Positions 31,890-62,090 of a DNA stretch of 64,000 bases are shown in pieces. Both the position numbers and the translations under genes were made by a program. A model generated the notes under the pieces. The model searched no databases, was not told the DNA's origin, and worked only from the letters and a program-made list of their open reading frames with translations. Location: the IMG/VR virus record IMGVR_UViG_3300046616_000314, positions 248,001 through 312,000 of that record, one strand, 5' to 3'. The stretch's first letter is position 1; each line of letters opens with the position of its first letter.

Positions 31890-34793
31890 CTACATGATCC
31901 AAATTTTTCCAGTAGCTTCCTCAAGCAACTCATCGAAGGCTTGCTTGACCTGATTCGGTAATTCCGACCAAAGGTGTTGAGCCGCAGCACGTCTCTCAGG
32001 ATCGGTTGTCAAATCCATGCCTTCGTCAAAGTGATCCGGCAACGGGTTCAGAGTAATTTTTCCAGTAATGATATACTGCGCAAAGCTTTCGTGAATCCAT
32101 TCAGATGCCGTGACCAGTTTATTCGACCGCGCCGAACGCATAGTACCCAAATAATGACCCATCATCTTAGTATAGATTTCATGGTGATCATGATAAATGA
32201 TATGTCCATACTGTGTATCTTGATCTGGCCACTCGTGATCATAGCCAATTTCCAAGATGTTATGGACAAAATTTTCAAAGACATAGGCTGCACTATAGGA
32301 CGACGCTAGCTTGTTACGTCCACTGATCAGAGTATGCGCCATTCGGTGAGCAATGATCCATGGGCTACGCAAGCTGATGTAGTCTTGATCCGACATATTG
32401 CTTCCGAGGATCATCGTAATATGGTTCGGATTTGCCTTGCTCAAATATTCATAGGCTTCCTTACCGAGTTTCTTTTGAACCCATTCCAAATCTACGTAAC
32501 CCTTTTGTGTCGTGGGATCATAGTCGGGATTGGTCGATTGCCAAAAATACATATCGAATGTGAATAGGGTTTTCATGAAAGCATTTTGGGCTTTCTTGAT
32601 TACGCCAGGATCACGCATGGCTTTCTTATCGACGGCTGACCAGTGTGGAGCTTCCATTTCGTAGCCAGTGAATTTCGACATCATTTCTTTTTCATTGGAG
32701 TCGAAATTCGGATCAACCTGCCAATCACCAATCGGGGCTTCGGTTAAACCAGCACCAAATTGATGAATGTCTTGTAATTTCCAAGTTTCGTGATCTTTAA
32801 AATATACTTGCCATCCCTTCAAGAATTTTTGAAGATACGGATTATTAATCAAATTATCCGATGATTGATACTTAGAATAAAATTCTAGTTCTAGATTACT
32901 TCCTCGCCAACCCAAGCTAATACAGTTTACCAATCCTTGAACATTAAAATGTGTTTTAAGATCATGATGAGTAGCATTGGCTGCATCCCATGCAATAATA
33001 CCATCTGGCATTACAAACATTCGAACCCAACCAAAATTTTGCAATAAACGTTCTAATTCGCCGTGAGAACCAATCTTATAAGTTTGCAAGTTAGAATTTT
33101 TCAGTTCCACTTTATCGAATGGAGCTTCGTCCAGAATTTCTTCCTCTATCGGTTCAGACGCCGTGATCAATTCTGTTAAGTTACCGAAGTATCTAATGAA
33201 TTTTGCTTGCTTGTCGGGAGATTCGATACCGTATTCGTTCTCGCCCATGACGATAACAAACAATCCAAGCGACGTTTTCCAAACTTCTCCTGCACCCGCC
33301 CAATCATTGCTTTCAAGCATTTCATCTGAATTCGTAGCTGCAATAAAGGGTTCCCAACGGTTGGACGCGGAGACATACAGCGCGTCACGCGCGTCCGCGT
33401 GCGAACTGTCCATGGCATCCCACATATAGATGTCCCCGGTGGAAGCATCATAGGCGCCCCGAATACCAGACGTTGCCGAATTCAACAGAGATTGGAATTC
33501 ACCACGGGTCGGATCGATGAAAAATTTTACGTTATTATTCCAAACCGAAGTCTCTTCGAAACGTTCGGTCAACTCGTCATCGGTCTCTTCATCTTCGTCA
33601 TCAAGCATCGTCCAATCGCCATAGATATCTTGGTCATAGTAATCGACTTCGATTTCTGGGAAATTGTTGACTAGCCAATCGCAACCGTGCGCCAATTCGG
33701 CGCCAACTTTATCACTATGCCACCAGATTGTGTTCAGTGAAGCATCTGTGACCGTGAGCATGATCGGTTGACCAAATTTGGTGCTATAAGCGTAAACTGG
33801 AATAGCATCCTTTGGAAGATTCAATTCCGCATGAACTGTGTTGTGGACAGCATCATAGGCAGACCATGCATAAAAATCTTTCCCAACGGCATAGCCGCGC
33901 GCCATCTGGTGTTTGCCTAAGCATTCCCGCCATTCTTTGGAATTGGGATTGATAAAGACGGTGACGATATGTTCTTTGCGCGGACCATATTGCGGCTTGA
34001 AAGCGTGGGCAAAGGCTTCCTTGACCGGCTCTGGATCGGAATGAACGGGTTGTTCGGGGAAATCCAGAACATCCGAGTAGTGCGCCTTGAAGTCTACGAC
34101 CGCGTGACCATTGCGACCAATGGCGTTGAATTTTACATTCGGTGGTAGCGTGATAGGCGCACGCCGACGCTTGCCCCAAGATGCTTTATACCCTTCGTTT
34201 CCGTAGACGGTTCCTGCCATGATATCGAACAAAAGTTCTTGGTCATCGCGCGTAGTTGATTGAATATTGCTGAAGGGCTCATCATCCCAATCGACCTGCG
34301 ACGGGTGCATTGTTACGTCTACGTGACGCATTTCTACGGAAATACTTGTGACATATTTCCAAATATTTGTCAGATCACCGATCAAAAACTCTTCGGATTC
34401 ATCCGACGAGACATCGCGCATACCAAGTGTACCCGCAATGGTGTCGATAGGTTCACGATAGGTTTGGTTACGCGGTTTGTTGCGATATGGCGCATAGCGC
34501 ATCGGAACAACCTTATGATTGTGCTTCAGACGTTGCAGGCTGAAGCCGATACGCCAAGCCTTGATCCCGCCTCTAGCGTAGGTATCTTGGATATCGAAGA
34601 ATGCATTGCGGGTAAGGCTGACGCCCTGGACAGTGGCATCATTGATCGTGTGGGGTGTTCGCCCGGTGATCGTCTGTGTCTTGAAAATCATCCGCAGAGC
34701 ATCAGCCGTAGTCCAGTGATAGACTTGTTGATCTGGTGCATTGACTAGTTCGTCAATACGGTCTTCGTTTAATAGGTCCATAAGGTCGCGCAT
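31890..34793 (-). CDS. Multi-domain late protein: ART-like N-domain, three internal repeats, zincin-like C-domain
   Basis: Start MRDLMDLLNE 5 nt after CATAAATA; VYHWT..GVSLTR..ESEE; repeats ending (A/M)WxAxxxxH; SPWIIAHRMAH...HESFAQY. Confidence 0.8.
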   Translation of the reverse strand: MRDLMDLLNEDRIDELVNAPDQQVYHWTTADALRMIFKTQTITGRTPHTINDATVQGVSLTRNAFFDIQDTYARGGIKAWRIGFSLQRLKHNHKVVPMRYAPYRNKPRNQTYREPIDTIAGTLGMRDVSSDESEEFLIGDLTNIWKYVTSISVEMRHVDVTMHPSQVDWDDEPFSNIQSTTRDDQELLFDIMAGTVYGNEGYKASWGKRRRAPITLPPNVKFNAIGRNGHAVVDFKAHYSDVLDFPEQPVHSDPEPVKEAFAHAFKPQYGPRKEHIVTVFINPNSKEWRECLGKHQMARGYAVGKDFYAWSAYDAVHNTVHAELNLPKDAIPVYAYSTKFGQPIMLTVTDASLNTIWWHSDKVGAELAHGCDWLVNNFPEIEVDYYDQDIYGDWTMLDDEDEETDDELTERFEETSVWNNNVKFFIDPTRGEFQSLLNSATSGIRGAYDASTGDIYMWDAMDSSHADARDALYVSASNRWEPFIAATNSDEMLESNDWAGAGEVWKTSLGLFVIVMGENEYGIESPDKQAKFIRYFGNLTELITASEPIEEEILDEAPFDKVELKNSNLQTYKIGSHGELERLLQNFGWVRMFVMPDGIIAWDAANATHHDLKTHFNVQGLVNCISLGWRGSNLELEFYSKYQSSDNLINNPYLQKFLKGWQVYFKDHETWKLQDIHQFGAGLTEAPIGDWQVDPNFDSNEKEMMSKFTGYEMEAPHWSAVDKKAMRDPGVIKKAQNAFMKTLFTFDMYFWQSTNPDYDPTTQKGYVDLEWVQKKLGKEAYEYLSKANPNHITMILGSNMSDQDYISLRSPWIIAHRMAHTLISGRNKLASSYSAAYVFENFVHNILEIGYDHEWPDQDTQYGHIIYHDHHEIYTKMMGHYLGTMRSARSNKLVTASEWIHESFAQYIITGKITLNPLPDHFDEGMDLTTDPERRAAAQHLWSELPNQVKQAFDELLEEATGKIWIM

Positions 34794-34861
34794 ACGGTTA
34801 TTTATGGCTTGACATTTGGTAGTGTTTTGGTACGGTCCCAATAATTGTTTGGAGATATCTT

Positions 34862-45577: not shown

Positions 45578-46777
45578 ATGCGACAGTGGATTAACATAGT
45601 CGAACACCGGGAACCCATCAACGAACTATTTGATGATTCGCCATCGTTGACCGCTATTCCTGACGCTGAACTTCCGCATTCGGGGCTCCCGCAATTACCC
45701 AGTGTGCCGACACTTAAGGCTTATAAATTTAAGGTAGGGTCGGAACGCTATGCGGTCTGGTTCATAAAACATTCCGATGCCGTGGAATGTCTATTTGCTA
45801 AATTCGTCCCGGCTCCGAACGGCACACAAACCATTTCATTTGAGCTAACACCGTCAGCAAGTGCCGTACAGGTGTTCTCCGCTGTCATGGTAGCCATCAA
45901 CACGTTCTGTTCGACGGTTAGACCTGAAACGATTGTATTCCCTGGTTGGAATGCAAGACAGAGCAATTTCTATAAGCGTCTAGCTCGTTATGCCGACAAG
46001 ACCGGTGTCTTGTCGAATGCGTATGAACTGTACACGCATGAACTTGACGGCAAAGAAATAACTGCGATCCGAAAGAAAGTTACGCCCAAGGCTTTCGAAG
46101 ACATCAGCGAAGATGTCTCGCCTGGGTTTAAGGCATGGTTCGGGGATAGCAAGGTGGTTGACGAACACGGCAACCCTCTAAAAGTTTATCACGGCACGAA
46201 TCAGCCGCTCACTAAATTTTCTAAAGATCGTGGCGGTGCCGCCACTGGTCCTCGCCACGGCGCGGCGCATGGTTTCTTCTTTACAAAATCGCCAGTTGTT
46301 GCATCAATGTATGCGGTTCATGCTGGCACTACGAATATTGCGGGTATGGAAGACCACGAACAAAAATCAGCACAATATCAAAAAGAAATTGCTGCTGCTG
46401 AGCGCAAAGGTGATTGGGATCGCTACGAACAACTCATGAGCGATTACGAAGATCACGAAATCAATGCAACTCGGGAAGACCCAATTCACGGTCAAAACGT
46501 AATTCCGGCGTATCTGTCTTTACAGCATCCTAAAATTTTAAATTATCAAGGTGGAAGTGGTGGTACATTTAGTGTTCATGGCGATTTGGATGTGGTTATT
46601 GATCAAGCCAAAGCCGAAGGCTACGATGGTTTGATTATGCTCAATGTCGATGATACTCCTAGCGATTCCGTCGTTACGGATCACTACGTTGCATTTAGCC
46701 CGAAGCAAATCAAATCGGTGTTCAACGGAAGCTTCAATCCGAACAGCGATCACATTAGCGAGACTTCACGAAAATAA
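45578..46777 (+). CDS. Protein with C-terminal ART-PolyVal-like ADP-ribosyltransferase domain
   Basis: FKAWFGDSKVVDEHGNPLKVYHGT, GFFFT, VIPAYLSL, GYDG, YVAFSPKQIKS; CATAAATA promoter and AGGAG RBS. Confidence 0.8.
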   Translation: MRQWINIVEHREPINELFDDSPSLTAIPDAELPHSGLPQLPSVPTLKAYKFKVGSERYAVWFIKHSDAVECLFAKFVPAPNGTQTISFELTPSASAVQVFSAVMVAINTFCSTVRPETIVFPGWNARQSNFYKRLARYADKTGVLSNAYELYTHELDGKEITAIRKKVTPKAFEDISEDVSPGFKAWFGDSKVVDEHGNPLKVYHGTNQPLTKFSKDRGGAATGPRHGAAHGFFFTKSPVVASMYAVHAGTTNIAGMEDHEQKSAQYQKEIAAAERKGDWDRYEQLMSDYEDHEINATREDPIHGQNVIPAYLSLQHPKILNYQGGSGGTFSVHGDLDVVIDQAKAEGYDGLIMLNVDDTPSDSVVTDHYVAFSPKQIKSVFNGSFNPNSDHISETSRK

Positions 46778-52867: not shown

Positions 52868-54056
52868 ATTGTTTGAAGCACGTTCTAACCCAACGCAGAA
52901 CAAAGACAACCGAGCTTCGGATGTTTCTGAATATTTGCGCGGTCTAGACTACGAAACTGGCGAACTGTTTATGAGTTTTACTCAAATCGATAAAGTTGGC
53001 ATGAACCCGCAATCGACTTACAACACGCCACTAGGTGTGTATTGCTATCCGATCAATCGCCACACTATCGAAGATTACGACAACAACAGTCTTCCATTTG
53101 CGGGCGATGCCAAGTTCGTGAACATTATCAAGTCACGCGGTAGTCAACTGAATGTTCAGGACTATGGCGATGATGATCTAGCCGACGACTCCAAGCGGTT
53201 GACCAGATATCTACTTAAGATTTTTCCCGAAAATGAAAATGAGATTGATCAAATTCATGCGCTAGCCGTACAGGATGCCAAGAATGGTACTCATGGCAAG
53301 AAAACGGCGGCTTCTTATATCTGGAATTACACTCGCTGGGCAGCTTACTTGCTGGACATCAAAGACCCGAAGGCAATCATTCGTAAGATGTCGGGATTTG
53401 ATTCTACCACACCAAGCAAGACAGCCGCGACTTGGAATGCCGTCCTGCGTAAGGTGCTAGGATATGATTCGGTAGTCGATAACGGCTGGGGCATCATTCA
53501 CGAAAACGAACCGACACAGGCGGTGTTCTTGGATGTTCGTGGTTTCCAGTTAGTATCGCGCCGCGTGAACACCAATTGGTCAGGTCGCCTCCTGAAGAAA
53601 ATTAATCTGAGTACAGTTCCGTGGTTGTGGAAGAATAACAATATCGCTTTCCGTTCCATCCTCGCGGCTTTGGAAATTTTTATTACTAAGGCGCCCGTAG
53701 TGCTCAATCGCAAATATGAAGTGAACCGAGACAAACTTCGACAGGAAGTTCCAGGGTATTTTGCGGCATTGCGATCAGTGATAAGATACACGCATGTCAC
53801 TATGCAGGAAGCTAGTTATATCGCTCATGGTATCATGAGTCATATCCGCAATGGTGGTATCTTGGAACATCTGAACCAAGACGAACGATTGGAACTGTTG
53901 GAGTGGTGGCTACCATTTTTCCAAAAAGGCTTTTCTACCCAAACCGATTTGGCTAGCAATGAAACGTTCAAGAGAGATTACATGAACGTATTTGTTCACG
54001 TCCTAGACGACGCACATTATGCTAAATTTGAGGAATTTGTGGCTAATTATGGATAA
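52854..54056 (+). CDS. Paralogue of the C-terminal domain of 50939-52867
   Basis: MLITELFEARSNP; SFTQIDKVGMNP..TPLGVYCYP...LGYDSVVD..IIHENEP.QAVF. Confidence 0.8.
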   Translation: MLITELFEARSNPTQNKDNRASDVSEYLRGLDYETGELFMSFTQIDKVGMNPQSTYNTPLGVYCYPINRHTIEDYDNNSLPFAGDAKFVNIIKSRGSQLNVQDYGDDDLADDSKRLTRYLLKIFPENENEIDQIHALAVQDAKNGTHGKKTAASYIWNYTRWAAYLLDIKDPKAIIRKMSGFDSTTPSKTAATWNAVLRKVLGYDSVVDNGWGIIHENEPTQAVFLDVRGFQLVSRRVNTNWSGRLLKKINLSTVPWLWKNNNIAFRSILAALEIFITKAPVVLNRKYEVNRDKLRQEVPGYFAALRSVIRYTHVTMQEASYIAHGIMSHIRNGGILEHLNQDERLELLEWWLPFFQKGFSTQTDLASNETFKRDYMNVFVHVLDDAHYAKFEEFVANYG

Positions 54057-55320
54057 TACATTTGCAGTAATGTCGGCTGATGAATTTAGAGAATTTATCA
54101 ACCGCACGCGCGAGATCAATTCAGACCTAGCACCGGGGCATGACAATTTCCACACGGATCGAATCAAGTACGTCTATCCTTTGGATAAGAATGAGCATTT
54201 GGTTGTGCTCAACGGTGATCACATTATTGCTATGGCAGGCGTTGAAACCAATCCGTATGACCATGAACAGCTTTGGATTAAGTATGTAAGCGTTGACCCA
54301 GAATATCGCGGTCAAGGTCTAGGGCGTTTCCTTCTAGAAAAGGTTTTCCAATACGCGGTCGCCCATGGTCAGAAGGTCAAGAATAGCAGCTTCACCGAAC
54401 TAGGCGCCGAACGTCTCAAGCATCTGCACCCGGAATTCGAGAAGAAATATCCACAAGCTGCATTCGCCCGAAACGAACAGGGTAAGTACGTAAACTCTCG
54501 CGGTCAGGTCATGGAAGAATGCAACTTCACGCTTGAGCGCGAAGCGGCGAGCCATCTACCTACGGAATGGCTGAACGAAGCATCGACCGAAACCCCGGAT
54601 GCCCCAACGGTCGATACGACCAAGGATGGTCAGACGATCACCTTTGAGCGTTTCAAGGATATCGAAGGCAATAAGAATCGCGGCTGGCGCGTAGACAAAA
54701 TCGAAGCCAAGATCGGTAACGAGTTAGTGGGCTACATTAAGATTTCGTATATTCCGAAGACTCGCTTCAGACAATATTACAAGAGTGTCTTCAATTTTGC
54801 TCATCAGATGCTAGGTCAGACTGTCTTTCCATTCGGAAAAGAAACTGCCTCACTAGAAAGCTTGAATAACAAAGAATTGTTTGACGCACTCTACCGTGTA
54901 TACAGAGAAAAGAGTTACAGTTTAGCCGAGCAACTAGACCCTAAGATGCCACGCAAGCAAGTTATGCTTTTGCTTAAGAAGCAAGAGTTGGCGTGGATGA
55001 ACGATGAAACTAACGAACCGTATGGTGAGAAATTCAAGAAGTTCTATCGCTACCACGTTGATAAGCCGATGGTCGATGCGATTCGCGTCGAAGATGGTAG
55101 CGGATCATTGGGTACCGCCGGTAAGCCGTCACATTTGCGTAGAGGAATCGGGCGCAAGCTCTATGCCGCCGCGTCAGAATGGATGCAAGAACGCGGTCTA
55201 CGACTACACGCATCGGGTTGCCAGACGAACGATGCCAAGGCGTGCTGGACAAAGTTTGATTCTGAAGGCGGCGTTAAGAGCGATGCCGATGGACGCCGTT
55301 ATATCGATTTCATGAAATAA
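54049..55320 (+). CDS. Tandem GNAT acetyltransferase-domain protein
   Basis: Motif A twice: VSVDPEYRGQGLG and HLRRGIGRKLY...SGCQTNDAKACW. Confidence 0.8.
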   Translation: MDNTFAVMSADEFREFINRTREINSDLAPGHDNFHTDRIKYVYPLDKNEHLVVLNGDHIIAMAGVETNPYDHEQLWIKYVSVDPEYRGQGLGRFLLEKVFQYAVAHGQKVKNSSFTELGAERLKHLHPEFEKKYPQAAFARNEQGKYVNSRGQVMEECNFTLEREAASHLPTEWLNEASTETPDAPTVDTTKDGQTITFERFKDIEGNKNRGWRVDKIEAKIGNELVGYIKISYIPKTRFRQYYKSVFNFAHQMLGQTVFPFGKETASLESLNNKELFDALYRVYREKSYSLAEQLDPKMPRKQVMLLLKKQELAWMNDETNEPYGEKFKKFYRYHVDKPMVDAIRVEDGSGSLGTAGKPSHLRRGIGRKLYAAASEWMQERGLRLHASGCQTNDAKACWTKFDSEGGVKSDADGRRYIDFMK

Positions 55321-55373: not shown

Positions 55374-55517
55374 ATGTTCTTCAAATCTAAAAAGATCATC
55401 AAAGTAGAAAAGCAGCCGAGCATCAATCGCTATCTCATCGATCAAATGATGAAAGCGAACCCGGCTGCTTCATATGTCGTAGACATCGGCACTAAGGGCA
55501 AGTTTACTCAGTCTTGA
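55374..55517 (+). CDS. 47 aa hypothetical protein
   Basis: Manual; GGAGG RBS; MFFKSKKIIKVEKQPSINRYLIDQMMKANP... Confidence 0.55.
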   Translation: MFFKSKKIIKVEKQPSINRYLIDQMMKANPAASYVVDIGTKGKFTQS

Positions 55518-55782
55518 TGAACTTGCTCTGGTGTTGCGCCATGTCCTCTGGGGACTCGTAACCGAGCAATTGCCACTCGGGAATCGGGAGAACCAGAGGC
55601 AGGACGAAGTAGCGCATATGCGCGTTGTCCACCGTTTGTTGAGCCTTGGCTTTCCACGCGGCGCGAGCTTGAGCCGGATCGCTGAAGACACCAACCACGT
55701 CAAGGTTGTCTGGGTCCTTGAAGATCGTGCCTTGAACGTGAACCAGTTCACCGCCGATTACCAGTAGAAGTTTCTGTTCCAT
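55504..55782 (-). CDS. DUF4170-family protein (alphaproteobacterial)
   Basis: LLVIGGEL...LDVVGVF...AWKAKAQQTVDNAHMRYF. Confidence 0.85.
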   Translation of the reverse strand: MEQKLLLVIGGELVHVQGTIFKDPDNLDVVGVFSDPAQARAAWKAKAQQTVDNAHMRYFVLPLVLPIPEWQLLGYESPEDMAQHQSKFIKTE

Positions 55783-55789
55783 CTTACCC

Positions 55790-56143
55790 TCACAAATTGA
55801 TTTTTAGCATCATCATGTCGGCGTCAAACATTTCCTTGTCGCCGTTCCATGCGAAACAATCGCAGCTTTTGTCAGTGATATTATGCTGACTCGAAAAGCT
55901 GTAAAATTCAGCAACCCATTCATCCGCTTCAATTATGAAATGGGTAGATGAATTGGTCTTGAGTTGCCCGTAGTCTTCCGCCGGTTGGAAAAAGATTTTT
56001 ACCGTGAAGTTCTTGCCAGAAAAATCCACGTGCCGCATGGCGCCGCATTTTTCCTTACCATTCCCGAAGAAGAAAGAATCCAACTCGGGTAGAACGAAGC
56101 GCATCAAGAGACGCTTATATTCCGGCTCAATGATGCGCTTCAT
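55790..56143 (-). CDS. Hypothetical protein, family-B-like
   Basis: ADEWVAEF..., tail MFDADMMMLKINL. Confidence 0.65.
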   Translation of the reverse strand: MKRIIEPEYKRLLMRFVLPELDSFFFGNGKEKCGAMRHVDFSGKNFTVKIFFQPAEDYGQLKTNSSTHFIIEADEWVAEFYSFSSQHNITDKSCDCFAWNGDKEMFDADMMMLKINL

Positions 56144-56148
56144 CGTTC

Positions 56149-57942
56149 CTAGTTCCGCCAGCGGTTCACGATGGGATAGCGACGATCCCGACCAAAAATC
56201 TTGCTTCCGATCTTAACACCGGGAGCCGCTTGGCGACGCTTGTATTCAGCGTTATCCACAAGTTTGCGGATTTTCTGAACAACATCCAATCGAACTTCAA
56301 GTTCGACAACGATGTCAGCGACCGACAGTTCTTCTTCGATCATCGCCTTGAGGATCGAATCGAGAACCGGATAGGGCGGCAGGCTGTCTTCGTCCTTTTG
56401 ATCGGGACGCAGTTCAGCCGAAGGCGGCTTCACGATGATCTCTTCGGGAACCACTTGAGTTGCCCGACCCAAGAAGCCAAATTCCGTCAGATATTTTTGC
56501 GGAATGGCATTGCGCCAGCGGCACAAGTCCCAAACCGTCGTCTTGTAGCAATCCTTGATCGGATTGAAGCCACCGCTCATGTCGCCGTAGAGGGTCGAGT
56601 AACCCACGCTGACTTCCGACTTGTTGCCGGTGGTCAGGAGGATATGACCCTCTTGGTTGGAGATCGCCATCAGGATAGTACCACGGGCACGCGCCTGGAT
56701 ATTTTCATCCGCAACGCCTTCAAGCTCACGAAGACCAGCAGTCATACCCTTTTCGTACTGGGCACTGCTATAGGCAACGCGCAGCGAATTCACGACGTTC
56801 TCAATCGGGATGGTTCGCATTTGCGCACCAAGGCGATCAGCCCCGGCTTCTGCATCCGATAGCGAGTGATCCGAAGAGAATGCCGAAGGCAGGCGAACCA
56901 AGTGAACGTTCTCGGGACCGATGGCGTCACAGGCGACAGCCGCGACCAGACCGGAGTCCACCCCGCCGCTGTAGCCGAGAACCACTGACTTGAAGCCTTG
57001 CTTTAGAAGGTAGTCACGGGTACCGAGCACGACAGCTTGATAGATTTCCTGTTCGTGTGGTGTAACGATCTTCGGATAAAGATGCAAGGGAGCCCGATTT
57101 TCCGGCGGCTTGATCCAGTGCGAGAACGAACCGTCATCGCGCACCGAGCCCACAATCGTAGTCGGAACGCCCGCGTCATTATATTCGAAATGGCGCGAAC
57201 GGGTTTGCGGGTGGAATTCGAAGGCGAACAAACCTTCTTTGAAATATGGCGCCGACTGATAGCCCTTGGCGTCGTAGTAGAACGATCCGCCGTCGAACAC
57301 CAGTTCGTCTTGACCACCGATCATGTTGACGTACAGGAACGGCAAGCCGGTTTCCTTGATGCGGTTGGCGATCACTTGGTGACGAGTGACATTCTTACCG
57401 GCTTCGAACGGTGAACCGTTGATGCTCAGAAGGAACGTGGCGTCATTGTCCGACAGCGAACGGCTCACGCTGGGGAACCAGCAGTCTTCGCAGATCATCA
57501 GACCGATGCGTTGACCCCGGAATTCGATGGGAAACGGTTCGGCGGTATTTGCTTCGAACACGCGCTTTTCATCGAACACACCGTAGTTCGGTAGTTCGGT
57601 CTTGTGGATCAGATCGACCTTCTTGAGAACCGGATCGATCAAGTACGCACTGTTGCGCGGTTTGACGTTGCCCTTCGTCGGCGTGCCGAAGATGATCCCG
57701 GCGTCCATGAAGCCGCCGCCCATGACAGCATCAATGATGCGTTGGTTGGCGCGTTCAACCGCGTCCATGAACGAATGGCGCGACACCAAGTCTTCGATGG
57801 GATAGCCGGTCACGGCGCACTCTGGGAAGACGACCAGATCAAAGCCCGATTTTGCGGCGTTCTCGTATTGGGCAATGATTTGATCCGCGTTGCCGACGAT
57901 ATCACCGACGACCGGGTTAAATTGAATGACAGCAATTCTCAT
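56149..57942 (-). CDS. nadE: Glutamine-dependent NAD+ synthetase
   Basis: Nitrilase-fold glutaminase with E-K-C triad (FPECAVTGY, KTELPNYGVFDEKR, ICEDCW) plus synthetase SGGVDS, ENIQARARG, TGNKSE, YKRRQAAPG. Confidence 0.97.
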   Translation of the reverse strand: MRIAVIQFNPVVGDIVGNADQIIAQYENAAKSGFDLVVFPECAVTGYPIEDLVSRHSFMDAVERANQRIIDAVMGGGFMDAGIIFGTPTKGNVKPRNSAYLIDPVLKKVDLIHKTELPNYGVFDEKRVFEANTAEPFPIEFRGQRIGLMICEDCWFPSVSRSLSDNDATFLLSINGSPFEAGKNVTRHQVIANRIKETGLPFLYVNMIGGQDELVFDGGSFYYDAKGYQSAPYFKEGLFAFEFHPQTRSRHFEYNDAGVPTTIVGSVRDDGSFSHWIKPPENRAPLHLYPKIVTPHEQEIYQAVVLGTRDYLLKQGFKSVVLGYSGGVDSGLVAAVACDAIGPENVHLVRLPSAFSSDHSLSDAEAGADRLGAQMRTIPIENVVNSLRVAYSSAQYEKGMTAGLRELEGVADENIQARARGTILMAISNQEGHILLTTGNKSEVSVGYSTLYGDMSGGFNPIKDCYKTTVWDLCRWRNAIPQKYLTEFGFLGRATQVVPEEIIVKPPSAELRPDQKDEDSLPPYPVLDSILKAMIEEELSVADIVVELEVRLDVVQKIRKLVDNAEYKRRQAAPGVKIGSKIFGRDRRYPIVNRWRN

Positions 57943-57944
57943 TT

Positions 57945-58286
57945 TTATTCCTCAATATCAACGGGAGTGATATGCCAAACCGAACGGCTCTGGGGTTTCA
58001 CTCCGGTACGCATGGCGTCCATCACTTGACTGATATTACTGATTCCGCCAGTAATTTCAACAAAGCCAACGCCGACGATGTTTAGGGCAAGCGCATCCGC
58101 ACCCGCCGTGATGTTTTGAACCTTGTCATTCTTAAGAATGATTTCAGTACAATCGACCAAGTTCTTGATGTTCTTGATCGCTTTCACGTGTCCAATTTTC
58201 AGAGCCACCTTGGCTGCATCATCTTCATTGTGGGCGAAGATGCTGCAACCAGAGTTGGCAGAATTGGTGATGCGGTAGATACGCAT
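57945..58286 (-). CDS. Hypothetical protein inside the NAD operon
   Basis: 113 aa ORF abutting pncA and nadE. Confidence 0.7.
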   Translation of the reverse strand: MRIYRITNSANSGCSIFAHNEDDAAKVALKIGHVKAIKNIKNLVDCTEIILKNDKVQNITAGADALALNIVGVGFVEITGGISNISQVMDAMRTGVKPQSRSVWHITPVDIEE

Positions 58287-58931
58287 TTAGTCCTCGTGCG
58301 GATAGGCGTGAGCGAAGGTCAGGTTTTCGTTACCCGGAAACTCTTCCAAGATAACTTGCTGCATGTCGCGCACGATGCCCTTGGTCAGGTCAGCCATGAC
58401 GATCACCTTGAAGCCACGCTTCAGGAAACCTTCAATCGCCCAAAAGACGCAGAAGTCGGCAGCAAAACCGGTGATGATGATCGTATCGACGCCTTGCGCC
58501 TTCAGATCGGCGAAGAATTCATCGCGATCATAGTACGAGTTGGTCAGCGCGAGACGCAGATCGCGCAGATACAACTTGTCTTCTTCCCACATATTGAAGA
58601 CGCCCTTTTCCAGGGCATAGACCGGGATGGCGAAATTGATCAACGCCGGATTGATGACGTTCTCCCAACCGGGTGTGCCCTTTTCACAGTGCAGATTGAA
58701 GCCTGGGGCGCCCACTTCCGGGTTGCCGAGATTTTCCGGCGAGCCGATGAAGGTTTCTTCGGTGTGCGTATCGAAGGTGTTCAGAACACCCGCGATTTCG
58801 TCAGGGTTCAAGCTGGCGTTCCAACGCAGCAGCTTGGAAACCACGGCTTCAGCACCTTCCACCGGCAGGGCAAAGCCCTTGAAGATGAAATCGGCTTGGG
58901 TATCAACGTTGACCACAAATTTGTTTTTCAT
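58287..58931 (-). CDS. pncA: Nicotinamidase (isochorismatase family)
   Basis: VDTQADF, DTH, HC..GTPG, KG, GFAADFCV catalytic D-K-C and metal ligands; operon context. Confidence 0.9.
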   Translation of the reverse strand: MKNKFVVNVDTQADFIFKGFALPVEGAEAVVSKLLRWNASLNPDEIAGVLNTFDTHTEETFIGSPENLGNPEVGAPGFNLHCEKGTPGWENVINPALINFAIPVYALEKGVFNMWEEDKLYLRDLRLALTNSYYDRDEFFADLKAQGVDTIIITGFAADFCVFWAIEGFLKRGFKVIVMADLTKGIVRDMQQVILEEFPGNENLTFAHAYPHED

Positions 58932-58943
58932 AATATTTTTTCC

Positions 58944-60278
58944 TTAAACCAGAACCGGAGCACCATCGAGACCTTCGATCCCGAACAGTGCGCGGTAGCG
59001 GTCCACTTCAGAGGCGGGACCAGTTGCCTTGTTATAGTTGTCCGACATCTTCACGGCAGGACGCCCATCGGCATCCTTGATCTTGGCAACAACCGAGATC
59101 GAACCCATGTAGTCGTCAGCTTCGCCAGGGACGCAGCCATAGAAATCGTTCGACAGGTTGGTACCCCAACCAAAGCCCATGCGGACCTTGCCACGGAAGT
59201 AGGCTTCGATTTCCAAGATGTCTTCACCGTGGGTGTCGTAGCCATCGATCTTGACATCAAGACCGTCGCTGAAAATAATCAGCTTTTCTTGCGGGTTCTC
59301 GCCGTGCGTCTTCCAATATTTGATCAGTTCGTCACCGCCAGGAATCGGCTTCTTGGAGTCGGGGCGAGCACCCGTCCACTGAGAAACCCATTGCGGGGCA
59401 TTCTCAAGGAACTGGGTCGTGCCGAACGTGTCGGGCAGGAAGACCAGCAGTCCGCCGCGATATTGCGCCGCCCACTTCAGGAGCACCTTGTATTGTGCAT
59501 CCTTCAGTTCGGCATCGTCTTGCGCCAGAGCCGCCAGGGTCATCGGTAGTTCATGGGCGTTCGTGCCCTTGGCTTCCAAACCATGCTTCATGGCGAGATA
59601 TGCGTTCGACGTACCGGTGAAGCGGTCGCCAAGAACTTCCTTCGCCAGCAGCATGGCGTATTCTTGCCAAAGGAAGCTATGGCGACGGCGAGTGGCGAAG
59701 TCCGTCAGGTTCAGGTCTTCGACAGTCGCCAGCTTTTCGAGCTTGGCGTACAGCTTCGCCTTGGCGCGGGCATACATGATGTCGATTTGGGTAGCCGTCA
59801 GCTTTGACATCCGCGAACGAGCAAGAAGCTCATTGATGATGGTCAGTGCGTAGATTTCCCAAAGCGTCACTTCGGTCCAAGTGCCGTGGAATTCGAGGAT
59901 GTATTGACCGGTTTCTTCGTCAACTTCCAATGAATATTCCGGCAGTTGGAACGTCTTCAGATATTCGATATAGCCCGGCTTGAACAGTCGGTCTTGACCG
60001 TAGAAGGTGTTTCCCTTGAGCCAGTGAATCTCGTTCGGCTGGAAACGCAGCGTGCGAGCATGGTCGAGTTGCGCGCGGAGTTGCTTGATATTGATGTTCC
60101 GCGCGAGCTTCACTCGCTTGGTACGATTGGTGACGGCGAACGTCACCTTCGTATTGAAGAAATCTTCACGGATAAGCTGTTGCATCAGCAGCTTATAAAA
60201 ATCGATGTCCAGCAGCGACCGAACGATGGGGTCGATGTCGTAAAGAAGGGCGTCTTTGGCGCGTTTTGCAAAATCCAT
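58944..60278 (-). CDS. pncB: Nicotinate phosphoribosyltransferase
   Basis: SLLDIDFYKLLM, DFATRRRHS, GTSN, GTNAHE, LPDTFGT, RPDS, FSDGL, FGWGTNL, K(M)SDN. Confidence 0.96.
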   Translation of the reverse strand: MDFAKRAKDALLYDIDPIVRSLLDIDFYKLLMQQLIREDFFNTKVTFAVTNRTKRVKLARNINIKQLRAQLDHARTLRFQPNEIHWLKGNTFYGQDRLFKPGYIEYLKTFQLPEYSLEVDEETGQYILEFHGTWTEVTLWEIYALTIINELLARSRMSKLTATQIDIMYARAKAKLYAKLEKLATVEDLNLTDFATRRRHSFLWQEYAMLLAKEVLGDRFTGTSNAYLAMKHGLEAKGTNAHELPMTLAALAQDDAELKDAQYKVLLKWAAQYRGGLLVFLPDTFGTTQFLENAPQWVSQWTGARPDSKKPIPGGDELIKYWKTHGENPQEKLIIFSDGLDVKIDGYDTHGEDILEIEAYFRGKVRMGFGWGTNLSNDFYGCVPGEADDYMGSISVVAKIKDADGRPAVKMSDNYNKATGPASEVDRYRALFGIEGLDGAPVLV

Positions 60279-60283
60279 AATAA

Positions 60284-61375
60284 TTAAACTTTCTTAATCA
60301 GAGCTTCGGAGTCGCTGATCATCTTCCAATGATCTTCGAAATATTCGTAACGCGGAATGGTATCCGGGTCCTTCCAAACGGCGCGCTTGGCGTCCGACGC
60401 CGCGCGAACCTTCGGATACGCCAGGGCTTCGCGAACCTTGGTGATATCGGTCACGCCCGGCGGAATCTTCGGAGTCAGATTGATGAAGGTGGTGTGGCTG
60501 ACGGTGCGCTTGCGAGTCGAGCGATTGGGATCATCGTAGGTTTTTTCGCCGATGATGCTGTTGCGTAGAGTTTCGCGAGCGACCTTCAGACGGGTCTCTT
60601 CGTACAGTTCCTTGATCGCAGCGTCCGCAGCCGTTTGATTTTCGCAGTGACCACCGGGGACCGCCCACAGACCCTTACCGGGGAAGCCGCCGCGCTGGAC
60701 CAAAAGAACCTTGCGCGCTTGGCGAACGACCGAATCCGCCGTGTAGAAAATCGGCGGATAGGGAGCACTGTCCCATTGCCCCAGATAGTTTTGCATGAAC
60801 ACCTTCTCGGCAAGAAGGCTTTCAAGATATTCGGGGGTTTGACGGAATTCTTGAAGGAAGGCGATCACGCCTGGGGCGAGATATTCAGTCGCTTCGCCGT
60901 TCAGGAATTCCGAGACGAGGCGTTGATCTTCGACAATATATTTGTCGCGCGCATAGGTCGCGTTGATCCCACGGAAGTTGGGGACTTCGACGCTTTCCCA
61001 ATCGGGGAACTGCGACAGATAATAGCCGGTGGGTTGATCTTTCTTGTGACCGACAAGGGCGGTGGGATCATCTTGAACGATATCCCGCGTGGCATCATGC
61101 ACGGCGGCTTGCCATTGCGAAATGTTGCCATAGTCCATGACGTTGACGAACTTGACCCGACGCAGTTGTTCGGGAGGCAGCATACGCCGCCACATTTCTT
61201 CACGTTCAAATTCTCGGAAGGGAACATGGTCCCATCGCCGTGCGGCGAAAGAAGAACCGTTGACGACAACTAGTTCTTCGCATTCTTGTAGCCCGGCTGC
61301 AACTACGGCGCCGTGAGCTAGTGTTACTGGTTGACCGCGAACAACGGTCACACCGTGACGATAACGATACTTCAA
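60284..61375 (-). CDS. nadM: Bifunctional (Na)MN adenylyltransferase / Nudix ADP-ribose pyrophosphatase (NadM-Nudix)
   Basis: RGQPVTLAH (HxGH variant), VGHKKD..YYL..FP.W, INAT; Nudix PPIFYTAD..VLLVQR..PGKGLWAVPGG...KELYEET, ASDA. Confidence 0.9.
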   Translation of the reverse strand: MKYRYRHGVTVVRGQPVTLAHGAVVAAGLQECEELVVVNGSSFAARRWDHVPFREFEREEMWRRMLPPEQLRRVKFVNVMDYGNISQWQAAVHDATRDIVQDDPTALVGHKKDQPTGYYLSQFPDWESVEVPNFRGINATYARDKYIVEDQRLVSEFLNGEATEYLAPGVIAFLQEFRQTPEYLESLLAEKVFMQNYLGQWDSAPYPPIFYTADSVVRQARKVLLVQRGGFPGKGLWAVPGGHCENQTAADAAIKELYEETRLKVARETLRNSIIGEKTYDDPNRSTRKRTVSHTTFINLTPKIPPGVTDITKVREALAYPKVRAASDAKRAVWKDPDTIPRYEYFEDHWKMISDSEALIKKV

Positions 61376-61430
61376 GGTAAATCCTACCGAGCTATGGTAG
61401 CGCGTGGACTATTCCTGCGCCATGTTTTTA

Positions 61431-61459
61431 TTTATACCAAACTTTTTTCGTAAACGCAA
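61431..61459 (-). promoter_or_regulatory. Promoter of the NAD operon (TTGCGT-N17-TATAAA, overlapping TATAAATA)
   Basis: Both a sigma70-like spacing and an exact late consensus at 61429-61436. Confidence 0.55.
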
Positions 61460-61476: not shown

Positions 61477-61506
61477 GAAAAAGCCCGGCGATTGCTCGCC
61501 GGGCTC
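61477..61506 (-). terminator. Intrinsic terminator after mucR
   Basis: GAGCCCGGCGAG-CAAT-CGCCGGGCTTTTT (minus strand). Confidence 0.85.
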
Positions 61507-61535: not shown

Positions 61536-62090
61536 TTAGGCTTCGGTCGAAGCCAGATCAGCAGCGGCGTTCTTGGCTTCCGATTCCACGACGGTTTCCT
61601 TGGCGGGCTTGCGAGCCTTGGTCGCCTTCGGAGCCTTCGCAGCCGGGGCAGCAGCCTTCGCCTTGCGACCGCCTTGACCCAGACCCAGAGCCTTCGCCAT
61701 CGCCGAACGGGCTTCCGAGTAGGCGGGCGCCGTGGTCGGGTAGTCGTTCGGGAGACCGAACTTCGCCTTGTATTCGGCGACGGTCATGCCGTTGGTGGTC
61801 AGGTGACGCTTCAGGGTCTTGTAGGGCTTGCCGTCGATGAAGCTGATCAGCGCGTCGTTGGTCACGGACTTGCGGATTTGAGCCGGGGTCGCCTTGGCTT
61901 GCTCGTCAGCGACGACAGCGACCGGCGAAGCGGCGTTGGTCAGACCGGTCAGAGCCGCCGAAATGGCGCCGATGACGCCGGGGATGTCGGTCGCCGACAC
62001 GGCGTTGTGCGAGAAATAGGCACCAGCAACAGCGGCGGTCAGTTCGACGGTCGAAGTCGCGGACGACACGGGTTGAGTTTGATCAGTCAT
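61536..62090 (-). CDS. mucR: MucR/Ros family transcriptional regulator (Zn-free type) with Ala/Lys-rich tail
   Basis: ELTAAVAGAYFSHN, PAQIRKSV..DALISFIDGKPYKTLKRHL, YKAKFGLPNDYP.TAPAYSEARS.MAKALGLG. Confidence 0.95.
   Translation of the reverse strand: MTDQTQPVSSATSTVELTAAVAGAYFSHNAVSATDIPGVIGAISAALTGLTNAASPVAVVADEQAKATPAQIRKSVTNDALISFIDGKPYKTLKRHLTTNGMTVAEYKAKFGLPNDYPTTAPAYSEARSAMAKALGLGQGGRKAKAAAPAAKAPKATKARKPAKETVVESEAKNAAADLASTEA

What the first reader, a model, noticed from the sequence alone, without database searches (positions are those of the whole stretch)
55504..61459. Complete four-enzyme deamidating NAD+ salvage operon: a candidate NAD-reconstitution pathway distinct from NARP1/NARP2
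Seen: a tightly packed minus-strand operon nadM-Nudix, pncB, pncA, ORF, Gln-dependent nadE, ORF, DUF4170, under one promoter. Known chemistry: PncA (Nam to Na), PncB (Na+PRPP to NaMN), adenylyltransferase (to NaAD) and NadE (to NAD+) rebuild NAD+ from nicotinamide. The Nudix domain would split ADP-ribose to AMP and ribose-5-P. Nam and ADPR are exactly the products of NAD-depleting defences (Thoeris, DSR, SIR2-HerA, Sir2-pAgo). The described phage NARP1 (Adps+Namat) and NARP2 (Nampt+Nmnat) use amidated routes. Inference: this Preiss-Handler-type set recycles both NADase products and may be a third anti-defence route, also feeding the phage's own ART-like proteins. If NadM is NMN-specific, NadE might instead amidate NaMN, as in the Francisella route. 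The Nudix box looks slightly degenerate (GGHCENQT...KELYEET).
Basis: partly seen in the sequence, partly recalled or inferred. Interest (0 to 1): 0.8.

Follow-up and report, generated by a model that had tools for sequence, protein, structure and literature searches.

The report
Phage nicotinamide-to-NAD+ deamidating salvage operon
A giant uncultivated phage carries a complete four-enzyme operon that should rebuild NAD+ from nicotinamide via nicotinic acid; it looks like a rewired version of a known phage counter-defence pathway (NARP2) and sits behind a previously undescribed conserved RNA leader that marks NAD-salvage genes in many phages and some bacteria.

Summary
Window 55504-61459 (minus strand) holds seven genes 0-12 nt apart: NadM-Nudix, PncB, PncA, orf113, glutamine-dependent NadE, orf117 and DUF4170. 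A terminator and a sigma70-like promoter lie upstream. Catalytic residues of all four enzymes are present, and the Nudix box is only mildly degenerate.

The operon is not unique. At least ten other phage-like contigs carry nadM-pncB-pncA-nadE in the same order. A second module type (nadE-pncB-Nudix-NMNAT-pncA) occurs in Phosso-like jumbo phages.

Among the 80 best NadM-Nudix loci in IMG/VR, 63 sit beside NadV (the NARP2 arrangement), 6 beside PncB and none beside both. The PncB-linked NadMs group together in a quick tree. So this is best read as NARP2 with Nampt replaced by PncA+PncB+NadE.

The anti-defence role is plausible but untested. "Third route" is out of date: NARP3 is PnuC+NadR (2026), and Preiss-Handler clusters in jumbo phages were reported in silico in 2024.

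By-product: a covarying two-hairpin 5' leader (invariant GAUAGAC loop, Shine-Dalgarno-presenting hairpin) precedes nadM here. It also precedes nadM, nadV, nadA and pnuC in more than 100 phage and gammaproteobacterial loci, and it is absent from Rfam 15.

The parts
61536..62090 (-). ROS/MucR-family regulator (184 aa). It lacks the two zinc-binding Cys positions. It is the conserved upstream neighbour of nadM in related phage contigs.
   Evidence: Pfam PF05443 126 bits. Homologues at 34-44% identity lie directly upstream of nadM in L017, L018, L020 and L029. GC3 is 0.76.
61478..61505 (-). Intrinsic-terminator-like hairpin (9-bp GC-rich stem, then T5) that ends the MucR transcript.
   Evidence: Sequence read. 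Relatives L017, L020 and L029 have an equivalent hairpin plus T-run at the same place.
61431..61459 (-). Sigma70-like promoter: -35 TTGCGT (61459-61454), 17-nt spacer, -10 TATAAA (61436-61431).
   Evidence: Relatives have strong TTGACA-17-TATAAT-type boxes at the homologous position. The consensus scan missed this one because the -35 matches only 3 of 6.
61373..61427 (-). Structured 5' leader. P1 is a hairpin whose loop (AUAG here) corresponds to the family's near-invariant G-AUAGA-C. It is followed by a CCAUAGC linker. P2 is a hairpin that presents the Shine-Dalgarno GGA in its loop and closes just before the TTG start.
   Evidence: This is the only covariance-model hit in the 64-kb window (R1 48.9 bits, R2 42 bits). 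On 117 distinct family members the covariation score is 0.825, against 0.177 for shuffles (0/500). No Rfam 15 family matches.
60284..61375 (-). NadM-Nudix: an NMN/NaMN adenylyltransferase fused to an ADP-ribose pyrophosphatase-type Nudix domain (363 aa, TTG start).
   Evidence: phmmer against PDB 2QJO gives E=1e-49 over residues 1-335, and against 2QJT E=4e-36. NCBIfam PRK05379 scores 252 bits, below cutoff. Motifs are RGQPVTLAH, INATYAR and the Nudix box GGHCENQ...KELYEET.
58944..60278 (-). PncB, nicotinate phosphoribosyltransferase (444 aa).
   Evidence: NF003704 424 bits, above cutoff 379. The best PDB match is Agrobacterium tumefaciens NAPRTase 1YBE at 488 bits, and the RRRHS His motif is kept.
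58287..58931 (-). PncA, nicotinamidase of the isochorismatase fold (214 aa).
   Evidence: Pfam Isochorismatase 42 bits. Alignments to the nicotinamidases 1ILW, 3PL1 and 2WT9 show the catalytic Asp (VDTQADF), Lys (EKG) and Cys (ADFCV), plus the Asp/His/His metal site (FDTH...LHC).
57945..58286 (-). orf113, a small protein of unknown function. It is probably an inserted phage gene and not a pathway member.
   Evidence: No Pfam, NCBIfam or PHROG hit. The exhaustive phmmer search finds only 11 weak relatives, in phage-like contigs without NAD genes. GC is 0.47, against 0.54-0.55 for the flanking enzyme genes.
56149..57942 (-). Glutamine-dependent NAD+ synthetase NadE: a nitrilase-type glutaminase fused to the synthetase domain (597 aa).
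   Evidence: NF010588 635 bits, above cutoff 479. PDB 3N05 aligns full-length at E=1.5e-128. The FPE / K / ICEDCW triad and the SGGVDS P-loop are present.
55790..56143 (-). orf117, an ORFan.
   Evidence: No family hit. The only hit among 5.8 billion clusters is itself. GC is 0.44.
55504..55782 (-). DUF4170 protein (92 aa), the last gene of the row. No NAD link was found.
   Evidence: PF13773 75 bits. It is absent from all related NAD loci.

Best explanation
This is a phage-encoded, complete deamidating nicotinamide salvage pathway.

Inferred chemistry:
1. PncA deamidates nicotinamide to nicotinate.
2. PncB makes NaMN from nicotinate, PRPP and ATP.
3. The adenylyltransferase domain of NadM makes NaAD.
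4. The fused glutamine-dependent NadE amidates NaAD to NAD+.
5. The Nudix domain of NadM probably cleaves ADP-ribose to AMP and ribose-5-phosphate.

The row is transcribed from one sigma70-type promoter (probably early, by host RNA polymerase) through a conserved structured leader.

In evolutionary terms it is the NARP2-type nadM module in which Nampt (NadV) has been replaced by PncA+PncB+NadE. Its physiological effect would be to keep or rebuild the NAD+ pool of the infected cell. That effect would also blunt NAD+-depleting defences.

Shown here: the genes, their order, intact catalytic motifs, recurrence in phages, the lineage link to NARP2-type NadM, and the shared leader.

Inferred: the substrate preferences of NadM and NadE, the timing of expression, and any anti-defence effect. 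I put about 0.8 on the pathway chemistry and about 0.45 on counter-defence being the main selective advantage.
For: Gene row and families.

Catalytic residues: NadM-Nudix against 2QJO/2QJT, PncA, NadE, PncB.

Recurrence:
- The same order nadM-pncB-pncA-nadE occurs in L010, L011 and L013 (Logan contigs with Macro, Metallophos and NUMOD3 genes).
- L014 keeps nadM-pncB-pncA but has no nadE in the 11.5 kb held.
- The same order also occurs in the IMG/VR contigs L017, L020 and L029, preceded by MucR and ending in a glutamine-dependent NadE 58-62% identical to the window's. L016 and L018 carry nadM-pncB-pncA, and no nadE was found there.

Partner survey of the 80 best IMG/VR NadM-Nudix loci: 63 NadV-linked, 6 PncB-linked, 0 with both.

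All 11 PncB-linked NadMs, plus 4 relatives of unknown context, fall into one group in a quick ML tree (SH-aLRT 93).

No cellular relative of this NadM turned up in the GTDB species-representative scan with peptide patterns drawn from this protein, which reaches close relatives only.

The same covarying leader precedes nadM in PncB-type loci and nadM/nadV in NARP2-type loci.

Precedents from the literature: a bifunctional NadM works with a fused NADS in Acinetobacter (PMC3376133). NARP2 (Nampt plus NadM-type Nmnat from KVP40) abolishes Thoeris and DSR2 defence (10.1101/2024.02.11.579819).
Against: - No experiment exists for this or any phage PncA/PncB/NadE set.
- NadM family enzymes often prefer NMN. 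The NaMN activity of this one is assumed.
- The HxGH motif is TLAH and the first Glu of the Nudix box is Gln, so either domain could be weakened. Against that worry, G->A in this motif is the commonest state in NadV-linked phage NadMs.
- The route costs more ATP than NARP2 and still needs PRPP.
- Removing nicotinamide would relieve product inhibition of Sir2-type NADases (my own knowledge).
- Only 71 of the 561 kb of this phage genome were seen, so a NadV or PnuC/NadR elsewhere cannot be excluded.
- The tree is a quick search, and the key branch is below the 95% mark.
Confidence: 0.7

Rival explanations
1. The operon is a general metabolic self-sufficiency module. It maintains NAD+ for the phage's own NAD-consuming enzymes (ART-like proteins, ligases) during the long infection of a 561-kb phage. 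It was not specifically selected by NADase defences.
For: This is the interpretation given for 174 'NAD-jumbo phages', including Preiss-Handler clusters (PMC11662467). NARP2 itself raises NAD+ even without a defence system. An ART-PolyVal gene lies 9 kb away. Infection by jumbo phage PA5oct up-regulates the host pncA-pncB1-nadE operon (PMC7318152).
Against: The closest functional analogue that has been tested (NARP2) does counter Thoeris and DSR2. In relatives the operon lies next to PnuC plus a NadR-like kinase, which is the NARP3 type, and next to Macro-domain genes. The two roles are not mutually exclusive.
Confidence: 0.4
2. Francisella-like order of steps: NadE amidates NaMN to NMN, and an NMN-specific NadM then makes NAD+.
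For: NadM enzymes use NMN efficiently, and Francisella pairs NadM with an NMN synthetase (PMC3376133).
Against: NMN synthetase activity is described for a NadE homologue adapted in Francisella; that it is a single-domain enzyme is my recollection. Here NadE is the fused glutamine-dependent type (NF010588 635 bits). This fused type acts on NaAD together with a bifunctional NadM in Acinetobacter.
Confidence: 0.1
3. The operon is a recently captured host operon carried as a passenger, with no phage-specific function.
For: GC3 of the enzyme genes, MucR and DUF4170 is 0.60-0.76, against 0.45-0.53 for neighbouring phage genes. PncB is closest to the Agrobacterium enzyme among solved structures. MucR and DUF4170 are families typical of Alphaproteobacteria (my own knowledge).
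Against: The same gene order recurs in at least 10 divergent phage contigs at only 35-60% protein identity. The NadM clade has no cellular member above 40% identity. The window's copy is a mosaic of two phage module types.
Confidence: 0.07

Closest known systems
NARP2 (Vibrio phage KVP40 Nampt/NadV + Nmnat/NatV)
   Same: A NadM-Nudix-type adenylyltransferase is the common core. Nicotinamide, PRPP and ATP are the inputs. Many uncultivated NARP2-type loci, and Rhodobacter phage RcXuper, carry the same 5' leader in front of nadM and nadV.
   Different: There is no Nampt. The PRTase is a PncB (it has NAPRTase_N, not NAMPT_N). Two extra enzymes, PncA and NadE, route the flux through nicotinate, NaMN and NaAD. 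NARP2 has been tested against defences and this operon has not.
Preiss-Handler gene clusters of gut 'NAD-jumbo phages' (e.g. Kuafu_71 pncB-nadD-nadE; PMC11662467)
   Same: Phage-encoded PncB and NadE are clustered in very large phage genomes. This prior work is in silico only.
   Different: Here the adenylyltransferase is NadM-Nudix rather than NadD. A nicotinamidase is included, so the start point is nicotinamide (the NADase product) rather than nicotinate. NadE is glutamine-dependent. The hosts are probably Alphaproteobacteria, not Bacteroidota.
Module of Phosso-like jumbo phages of Rhizobiaceae (nadE-pncB-...-Nudix-NMNAT-pncA-x-nucleoside deoxyribosyltransferase-like)
   Same: The same five activities are present. 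The window's PncA (38-47% identity) and its glutamine-dependent NadE (54% to L004, 46% to Atu_ph07) belong to this lineage. In Atu_ph07 itself the NadE and PncB homologues lie about 90 kb apart.
   Different: The gene order differs. Nudix and NMNAT are separate genes in the opposite order. No leader motif was detected there.
Acinetobacter NAD network (PncA, PncB, bifunctional NadM, fused NadE; Sorci 2010, cited in PMC3376133)
   Same: The same four-enzyme logic applies, with NadM taking the place of NadD.
   Different: That network is cellular and its genes are not in one operon. The window's NadM is at most about 38% identical to bacterial NadMs.
NARP3 (PnuC + NadR; PMC13464706)
   Same: It is a phage NAD+-restoring module. 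In relatives L010, L011 and L013 a PnuC gene follows the nadM-pncB-pncA-nadE operon directly, with an AAA_28 kinase gene after it in L010 and L011.
   Different: NARP3 uses imported nicotinamide riboside. Neither of its genes is present in the 71 kb seen here.

Membership tests
NARP2 | Nampt (NadV-type nicotinamide phosphoribosyltransferase) | tested here: not met
   The only PRTase is PncB (NF003704 424 bits; NAPRTase_N present, no NAMPT_N). tblastn with a phage NadV finds nothing in the window or in the 7.4 kb beyond it.
NARP2 | NadM-type Nmnat encoded with it | tested here: met
   Full-length alignment to the 2QJO NadM-Nudix structure at E=1e-49.
NARP2 | Restores NAD+ and overcomes NADase defences | not testable with these tools
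   This needs infection assays and LC-MS.
NARP1 | Adps (Prs-like ADPR pyrophosphokinase) plus Namat | tested here: not met
   None of the seven operon proteins hits a Prs-like family or a Namat/Nampt-type family. The rest of the window was not scanned for Prs-like genes.
NARP3 | PnuC transporter plus NadR-like kinase/adenylyltransferase | tested here: not met
   There is no PnuC homologue in the window or the 7.4 kb beyond it; NadR was not searched for. The pair is present next to the operon in relatives only.
Deamidating salvage (PncA + Preiss-Handler) | Nicotinamidase with the Asp-Lys-Cys triad and Asp/His/His metal site | tested here: met
   Alignments to 1ILW and 3PL1 and the sequence itself. 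The family scores are weak, however: Pfam 42 bits, and NCBIfam PncA 31 bits against a cutoff of 174.
Deamidating salvage (PncA + Preiss-Handler) | Nicotinate phosphoribosyltransferase | tested here: met
   NF003704 above cutoff. 1YBE matches at 488 bits.
Deamidating salvage (PncA + Preiss-Handler) | NaMN adenylyltransferase (canonically NadD) | tested here: inconclusive
   There is no NadD. NadM is present, but its NaMN activity cannot be read from the sequence. The precedent is the bifunctional NadM of Acinetobacter and archaea.
Deamidating salvage (PncA + Preiss-Handler) | NAD+ synthetase | tested here: met
   NF010588 635 bits, above cutoff 479. Glutaminase triad and P-loop are present.
NadM-Nudix (PRK05379) | (H/T)xGH and ISSTxxR nucleotidyltransferase motifs | tested here: inconclusive
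   The motifs read TLAH (Gly->Ala) and INATYAR. TxAH/TxPH is conserved across the 9 closest relatives, and HNAH is the commonest form in NadV-linked phage NadMs. There is no PF01467 hit, and all NCBIfam equivalog scores are below cutoff.
NadM-Nudix (PRK05379) | Nudix box GX5EX7REUXEEXGU | tested here: inconclusive
   The box is GGHCENQTAADAAIKELYEETRL. It has a one-residue deletion, the first Glu is Gln and Arg is Lys, but the E-x2-EE core is kept. The final x-G-U reads T-R-L, as in the Synechocystis enzyme.
Known NAD+ riboswitches (Rfam nadA and pnuC motifs) | Match to the Rfam covariance models | tested here: not met
   No such hit even at E<=10 on the window leader, nor at E<=5 on L050. Nothing reaches gathering score in 8 whole loci.

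The most novel reading that the evidence does not exclude
The operon is a fourth, deamidating NAD+ reconstitution pathway. It evolved from NARP2 by swapping Nampt for PncA+PncB+NadE. It would be controlled by a so far undescribed NAD-salvage-specific regulatory RNA (GAUAGAC hairpin plus Shine-Dalgarno-presenting hairpin) that phages share with Gammaproteobacteria. That RNA could be a new riboswitch class or a new protein-RNA operator that senses an NAD-related metabolite.
Probability: 0.3. Interest if true: 0.85.

Novelty: new variant of a known kind. Interest (0 to 1): 0.62.

Why it matters
NAD+ depletion is one of the commonest outcomes of bacterial immunity, and three phage pathways that rebuild NAD+ are known.

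If the PncA-PncB-NadM-NadE operon also rescues phages, several things follow:
- Phages can reach NAD+ through the deamidated branch as well.
- The NadM-Nudix core would be shown to be a platform onto which alternative upstream branches are grafted.
- NAD+-dependent defences in soil and rhizosphere Alphaproteobacteria would face a further counter-measure.

The conserved leader matters independently. It is a testable candidate for a new NAD-related cis-regulatory RNA that precedes nadM, nadV, nadA and pnuC. It also offers a sequence tag for finding NAD-salvage genes, including three unannotated small-protein families, in phage genomes.

Tried and rejected
1. T4-type late promoter. TATAAATA lies 54 nt upstream of nadM, but there are only 3 copies in the window against 1.4 expected. 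In relatives the box is the -10 of clear TTGACA-17-TATAAT promoters. I rejected the late-promoter reading in favour of a sigma70-type promoter.

2. 'TLAH means a dead adenylyltransferase'. I rejected this as an argument. The variant is conserved in the clade, and G->A is the majority state in NadV-linked phage NadMs.

3. orf113 and orf117 as pathway components. They have no family hits and no homologues in related NAD loci. They are ORFans in the indexed search. The weak relatives of orf113 lie in non-NAD contexts.

4. Leader as an NrtR or NadR DNA operator. Those are palindromes with conserved arms (TG-N7-CA; TGTTTA-N6-TAAACA). Here the arms covary and the asymmetric centre is invariant, so I rejected this.

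5. Rfam search of the leader found nothing.

6. Megablast of 24 kb of the window against GenBank phages gave no match.

7. The GTDB scan for close NadM relatives found none.

8. The KVP40 region I fetched did not contain natV. The KVP40-like phage nt-1, phiM12, a Klebsiella Slopekvirus and Aeromonas Aes508 show no leader with model R1.

10. The KVP40 salvage paper (PMC5388814) is not held.

Full report
**1. What is there**

The window comes from IMG/VR contig IMGVR_UViG_3300046616_000314, which is 561,116 bp long. It looks like part of a very large phage:
- a T4 gp30.3-family protein, an HNH endonuclease, an ART-PolyVal protein, a class II aminoacyl-tRNA synthetase, a 3445-aa ORF and many PHROG-only families;
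- no close relative among GenBank phages.

On the minus strand between 61375 and 55504 lie seven ORFs separated by 0-12 nt. In order they are:
- NadM-Nudix (363 aa);
- PncB (444 aa);
- PncA (214 aa);
- orf113;
- glutamine-dependent NadE (597 aa);
- orf117;
- a DUF4170 protein.

Upstream lies the terminator hairpin of the preceding gene (61505-61478). After it comes -35 TTGCGT (61459-61454), a 17-nt spacer and -10 TATAAA (61436-61431).

**2. Are the enzymes intact?**

- PncB scores above the curated NCBIfam cutoff. It matches the Agrobacterium tumefaciens enzyme 1YBE far better than any other solved NAPRTase (488 bits against 146 or less), and the RRRHS histidine motif is present.
- NadE aligns end to end with fused NAD+ synthetases. 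It keeps the Glu/Lys/Cys glutaminase triad (FPE, K, ICEDCW) and the SGGVDS P-loop.
- PncA has weak family scores. Even so, it aligns with the P. horikoshii and M. tuberculosis nicotinamidases and keeps the Asp-Lys-Cys triad and the Asp/His/His metal site.
- NadM-Nudix aligns over its whole length with the Synechocystis and Francisella NadM-Nudix structures.
  - Its HxGH motif reads TLAH, and ISSTxxR reads INATYAR.
  - Its Nudix box has a one-residue deletion, Gln in place of the first Glu and Lys in place of Arg, but the E-x2-EE core is kept.
  - These deviations are conserved in its nearest relatives.
  - Gly->Ala in the first motif is the majority state among NadV-linked phage NadMs.
  - I therefore do not read these deviations as decay.

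**3. Is it a one-off?**

No. There are two recurring arrangements.

*The NadM-led arrangement*
- The nearest NadM homologues (46-51% identity) all come from metagenome assemblies.
- In L010, L011 and L013 the contigs carry nadM-Nudix, pncB, pncA and a short NH3-type nadE in that order. A Gcw_chp protein and PnuC follow, and an AAA_28 kinase follows PnuC in L010 and L011.
- Macro, Metallophos, NUMOD3 and many small ORFs sit around them.
- L014 keeps nadM-pncB-pncA beside an integrase, with no nadE in the stretch held.
- In IMG/VR, L017, L020 and L029 (contigs of 82-578 kb) carry a MucR-like gene, then nadM, pncB, an isochorismatase-type PncA and a glutamine-dependent NadE that is 58-62% identical to the window's.
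- L016 and L018 have nadM-pncB-pncA.

*The second arrangement*
- The order is nadE-pncB-small ORFs-Nudix-NMNAT-pncA-x-nucleoside-deoxyribosyltransferase-like.
- It sits near the T4 gp15 homologue of jumbo phages related to Sinorhizobium phage Phosso and Agrobacterium phage Atu_ph07.

The window's copy is a mosaic. NadM belongs to the first lineage, while PncA and NadE are closest to the second.

The enzyme genes, MucR and DUF4170 have higher GC3 (0.60-0.76) than neighbouring phage genes (0.45-0.53). The two orphan ORFs have background composition.

**4. Relation to NARP2**

I searched IMG/VR with a NadM alignment and fetched the 80 best loci. Within about 8 kb of nadM:
- 63 have a NadV (Nampt; the NAMPT_N domain was confirmed in L023);
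- 6 have PncB;
- 11 have neither, and most of these are truncated;
- none has both.

In a quick maximum-likelihood tree of 99 NadM-Nudix proteins, all 11 PncB-linked sequences, plus four close relatives of unknown context, form one group. Its SH-aLRT support is 93, just under the program's 95 mark. The window sits in a 100%-supported subclade.

PncB-linked NadMs share His after the GG of the Nudix box, whereas NadV-linked ones have Phe or Tyr.

NARP2, the KVP40 Nampt plus NadM-type Nmnat, has been shown to cancel Thoeris and DSR2 defence. The simplest reading is that this operon is a NARP2 derivative in which the one-step amidated branch was exchanged for the three-step deamidated branch.

Bacterial precedents exist for each pairing:
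- a bifunctional NadM with a fused NADS in Acinetobacter;
- nadM-pncB adjacency in Hahella, and a pncA-pncB-nadE operon in Pseudomonas.

**5. A conserved leader (by-product)**

The 55 nt between the -10 box and the TTG start are conserved in every PncB-linked locus that has upstream sequence. Each folds on its own into the same two hairpins.

*How widely it occurs*
- A covariance model built from eight of them found 52 hits in 1.35 Mb. All are on the nadM strand, and only one is in the 64-kb window.
- A refined model gave 129 hits at E<=0.001.
- The ORF that starts at the 3' end of each of those hits is:
  - nadM, 63 times;
  - nadV, 45 times;
  - nadA, twice;
  - one of a few families of small unannotated proteins inside NAD clusters, 16 times;
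  - a radical-SAM protein, once;
  - something else, twice.
- A weaker hit precedes a PnuC.

*Structure and covariation*
- P1 has a near-invariant G-AUAGA-C apex on a stem whose sequence varies freely.
- P2 holds the AGGA Shine-Dalgarno sequence in its loop and closes next to the start codon.
- On 117 distinct sequences, 98.6% of cells pair and all seven pairs show double-sided changes.
- The covariation score is 0.825, against 0.177 for shuffles (0 of 500 reach it) and 0.134 or less for slid partners.

*Caveats*
- The alignment is fitted to the model.
- The loci were chosen for having nadM.
- The window's own leader is not unusually stable (z = -1.0).

*An answer to the selection bias*
- A gene-blind pattern scan of 185,579 bacterial and archaeal genomes returned a chance-level number of pattern matches.
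- Among them, ten of the eleven covariance-model hits of 25 bits or more lie directly upstream of nadV or nadM in Gammaproteobacteria.
- These include second copies that the pattern itself had not selected.

*Other points*
- The cultured Rhodobacter phage RcXuper has the motif before both nadM and nadV.
- Rfam 15 has no matching family.
- It does not look like an NrtR or NadR operator.
- I found no paper linking nadV to a riboswitch.

The motif ties this operon by regulation to NARP2-type genes. It is also a candidate new NAD-related cis-regulatory RNA.

**6. What it most likely does**

- The chemistry Nam -> Na -> NaMN -> NaAD -> NAD+ is well supported by sequence. It remains inferred for the NadM step.
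- The Nudix domain would turn ADPR into AMP and ribose-5-P. It does not feed ADPR into the pathway directly.
- The sigma70-type promoters of the relatives suggest early transcription by host polymerase.
- Sequence cannot settle whether the selective value is counter-defence or general NAD+ autonomy. Both interpretations are in the literature, and they are compatible.

**7. Novelty**

NARP3 is PnuC+NadR, and Preiss-Handler clusters in jumbo phages were reported in silico.
- I found no description in the held literature of the NadM-Nudix/PncA/PncB/Gln-NadE architecture, its descent from the NARP2 lineage, the MucR neighbour, or the shared leader.
- I therefore rate it a new variant of a known kind, with a more novel regulatory element attached.

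Noticed in passing
window 61373-61427 (-); also L010, L012-L014, L016-L094, L096, L106, L132, L139, L140, L155, L159, L165, L221-L262: A conserved, covarying two-hairpin 5' leader (G-AUAGA-C loop; Shine-Dalgarno-presenting hairpin) lies directly upstream of nadM, nadV, nadA, pnuC and a few small ORF families, in phages and in Gammaproteobacteria. It is not in Rfam 15.
   Followed up: yes
window 61536-62090 (-): A ROS/MucR-family regulator (126 bits) lacks the two Cys zinc ligands. It is conserved directly upstream of nadM in L017, L018, L020 and L029. Together with DUF4170 and the Agrobacterium-like PncB, it points to an alphaproteobacterial host.
   Followed up: partly
L078:7467-7820, L045:7678-7995, L074:7627-7998 (and their homologues): Three families of small proteins (about 118, 106 and 124 aa, no Pfam hit) sit just upstream of nadM in NARP2-type loci. 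Each is preceded by its own copy of the leader, so they are candidate unrecognised members of the phage NAD-salvage regulon.
   Followed up: partly
L010:15029-17751, L011:5943-8582, L013:4747-6177: In relatives the nadM-pncB-pncA-nadE operon is followed by a Gcw_chp (PF09694) protein and then PnuC, with an AAA_28 kinase after PnuC in L010 and L011. A NARP3-like pair is thus fused onto the same locus, together with an unexplained Gcw_chp partner.
   Followed up: no
window 45578-46777 (+): A 399-aa protein with an ART-PolyVal ADP-ribosyltransferase domain (68 bits), a likely NAD+ consumer encoded 9 kb from the operon.
   Followed up: no
window 20031-30368 (-) and 31890-34841 (-): Giant ORFs of 3445 aa and 983 aa. 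The 983-aa ORF has no Pfam or PHROG hit, and the 3445-aa ORF was not searched.
   Followed up: no
window 16204-17469 (+): A phage-encoded class II aminoacyl-tRNA synthetase (tRNA-synt_2b plus HGTP_anticodon domains; phrog_18916 524 bits).
   Followed up: no
window 55375-55517 (+): A small plus-strand ORF with a strong GGAGG ribosome-binding site converges on the DUF4170 gene and overlaps its 3' end by 14 nt. No terminator-like site was found between the convergent genes.
   Followed up: no
window 54019-55320 (+): A 433-aa protein with an N-terminal GNAT acetyltransferase domain lies immediately downstream of, and convergent with, the NAD operon.
   Followed up: no
L016:1115-3471: A cluster of eight tRNA genes and a group I intron lies 4.5 kb upstream of the nadM-pncB-pncA operon of a 240-kb phage contig.
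   Followed up: no
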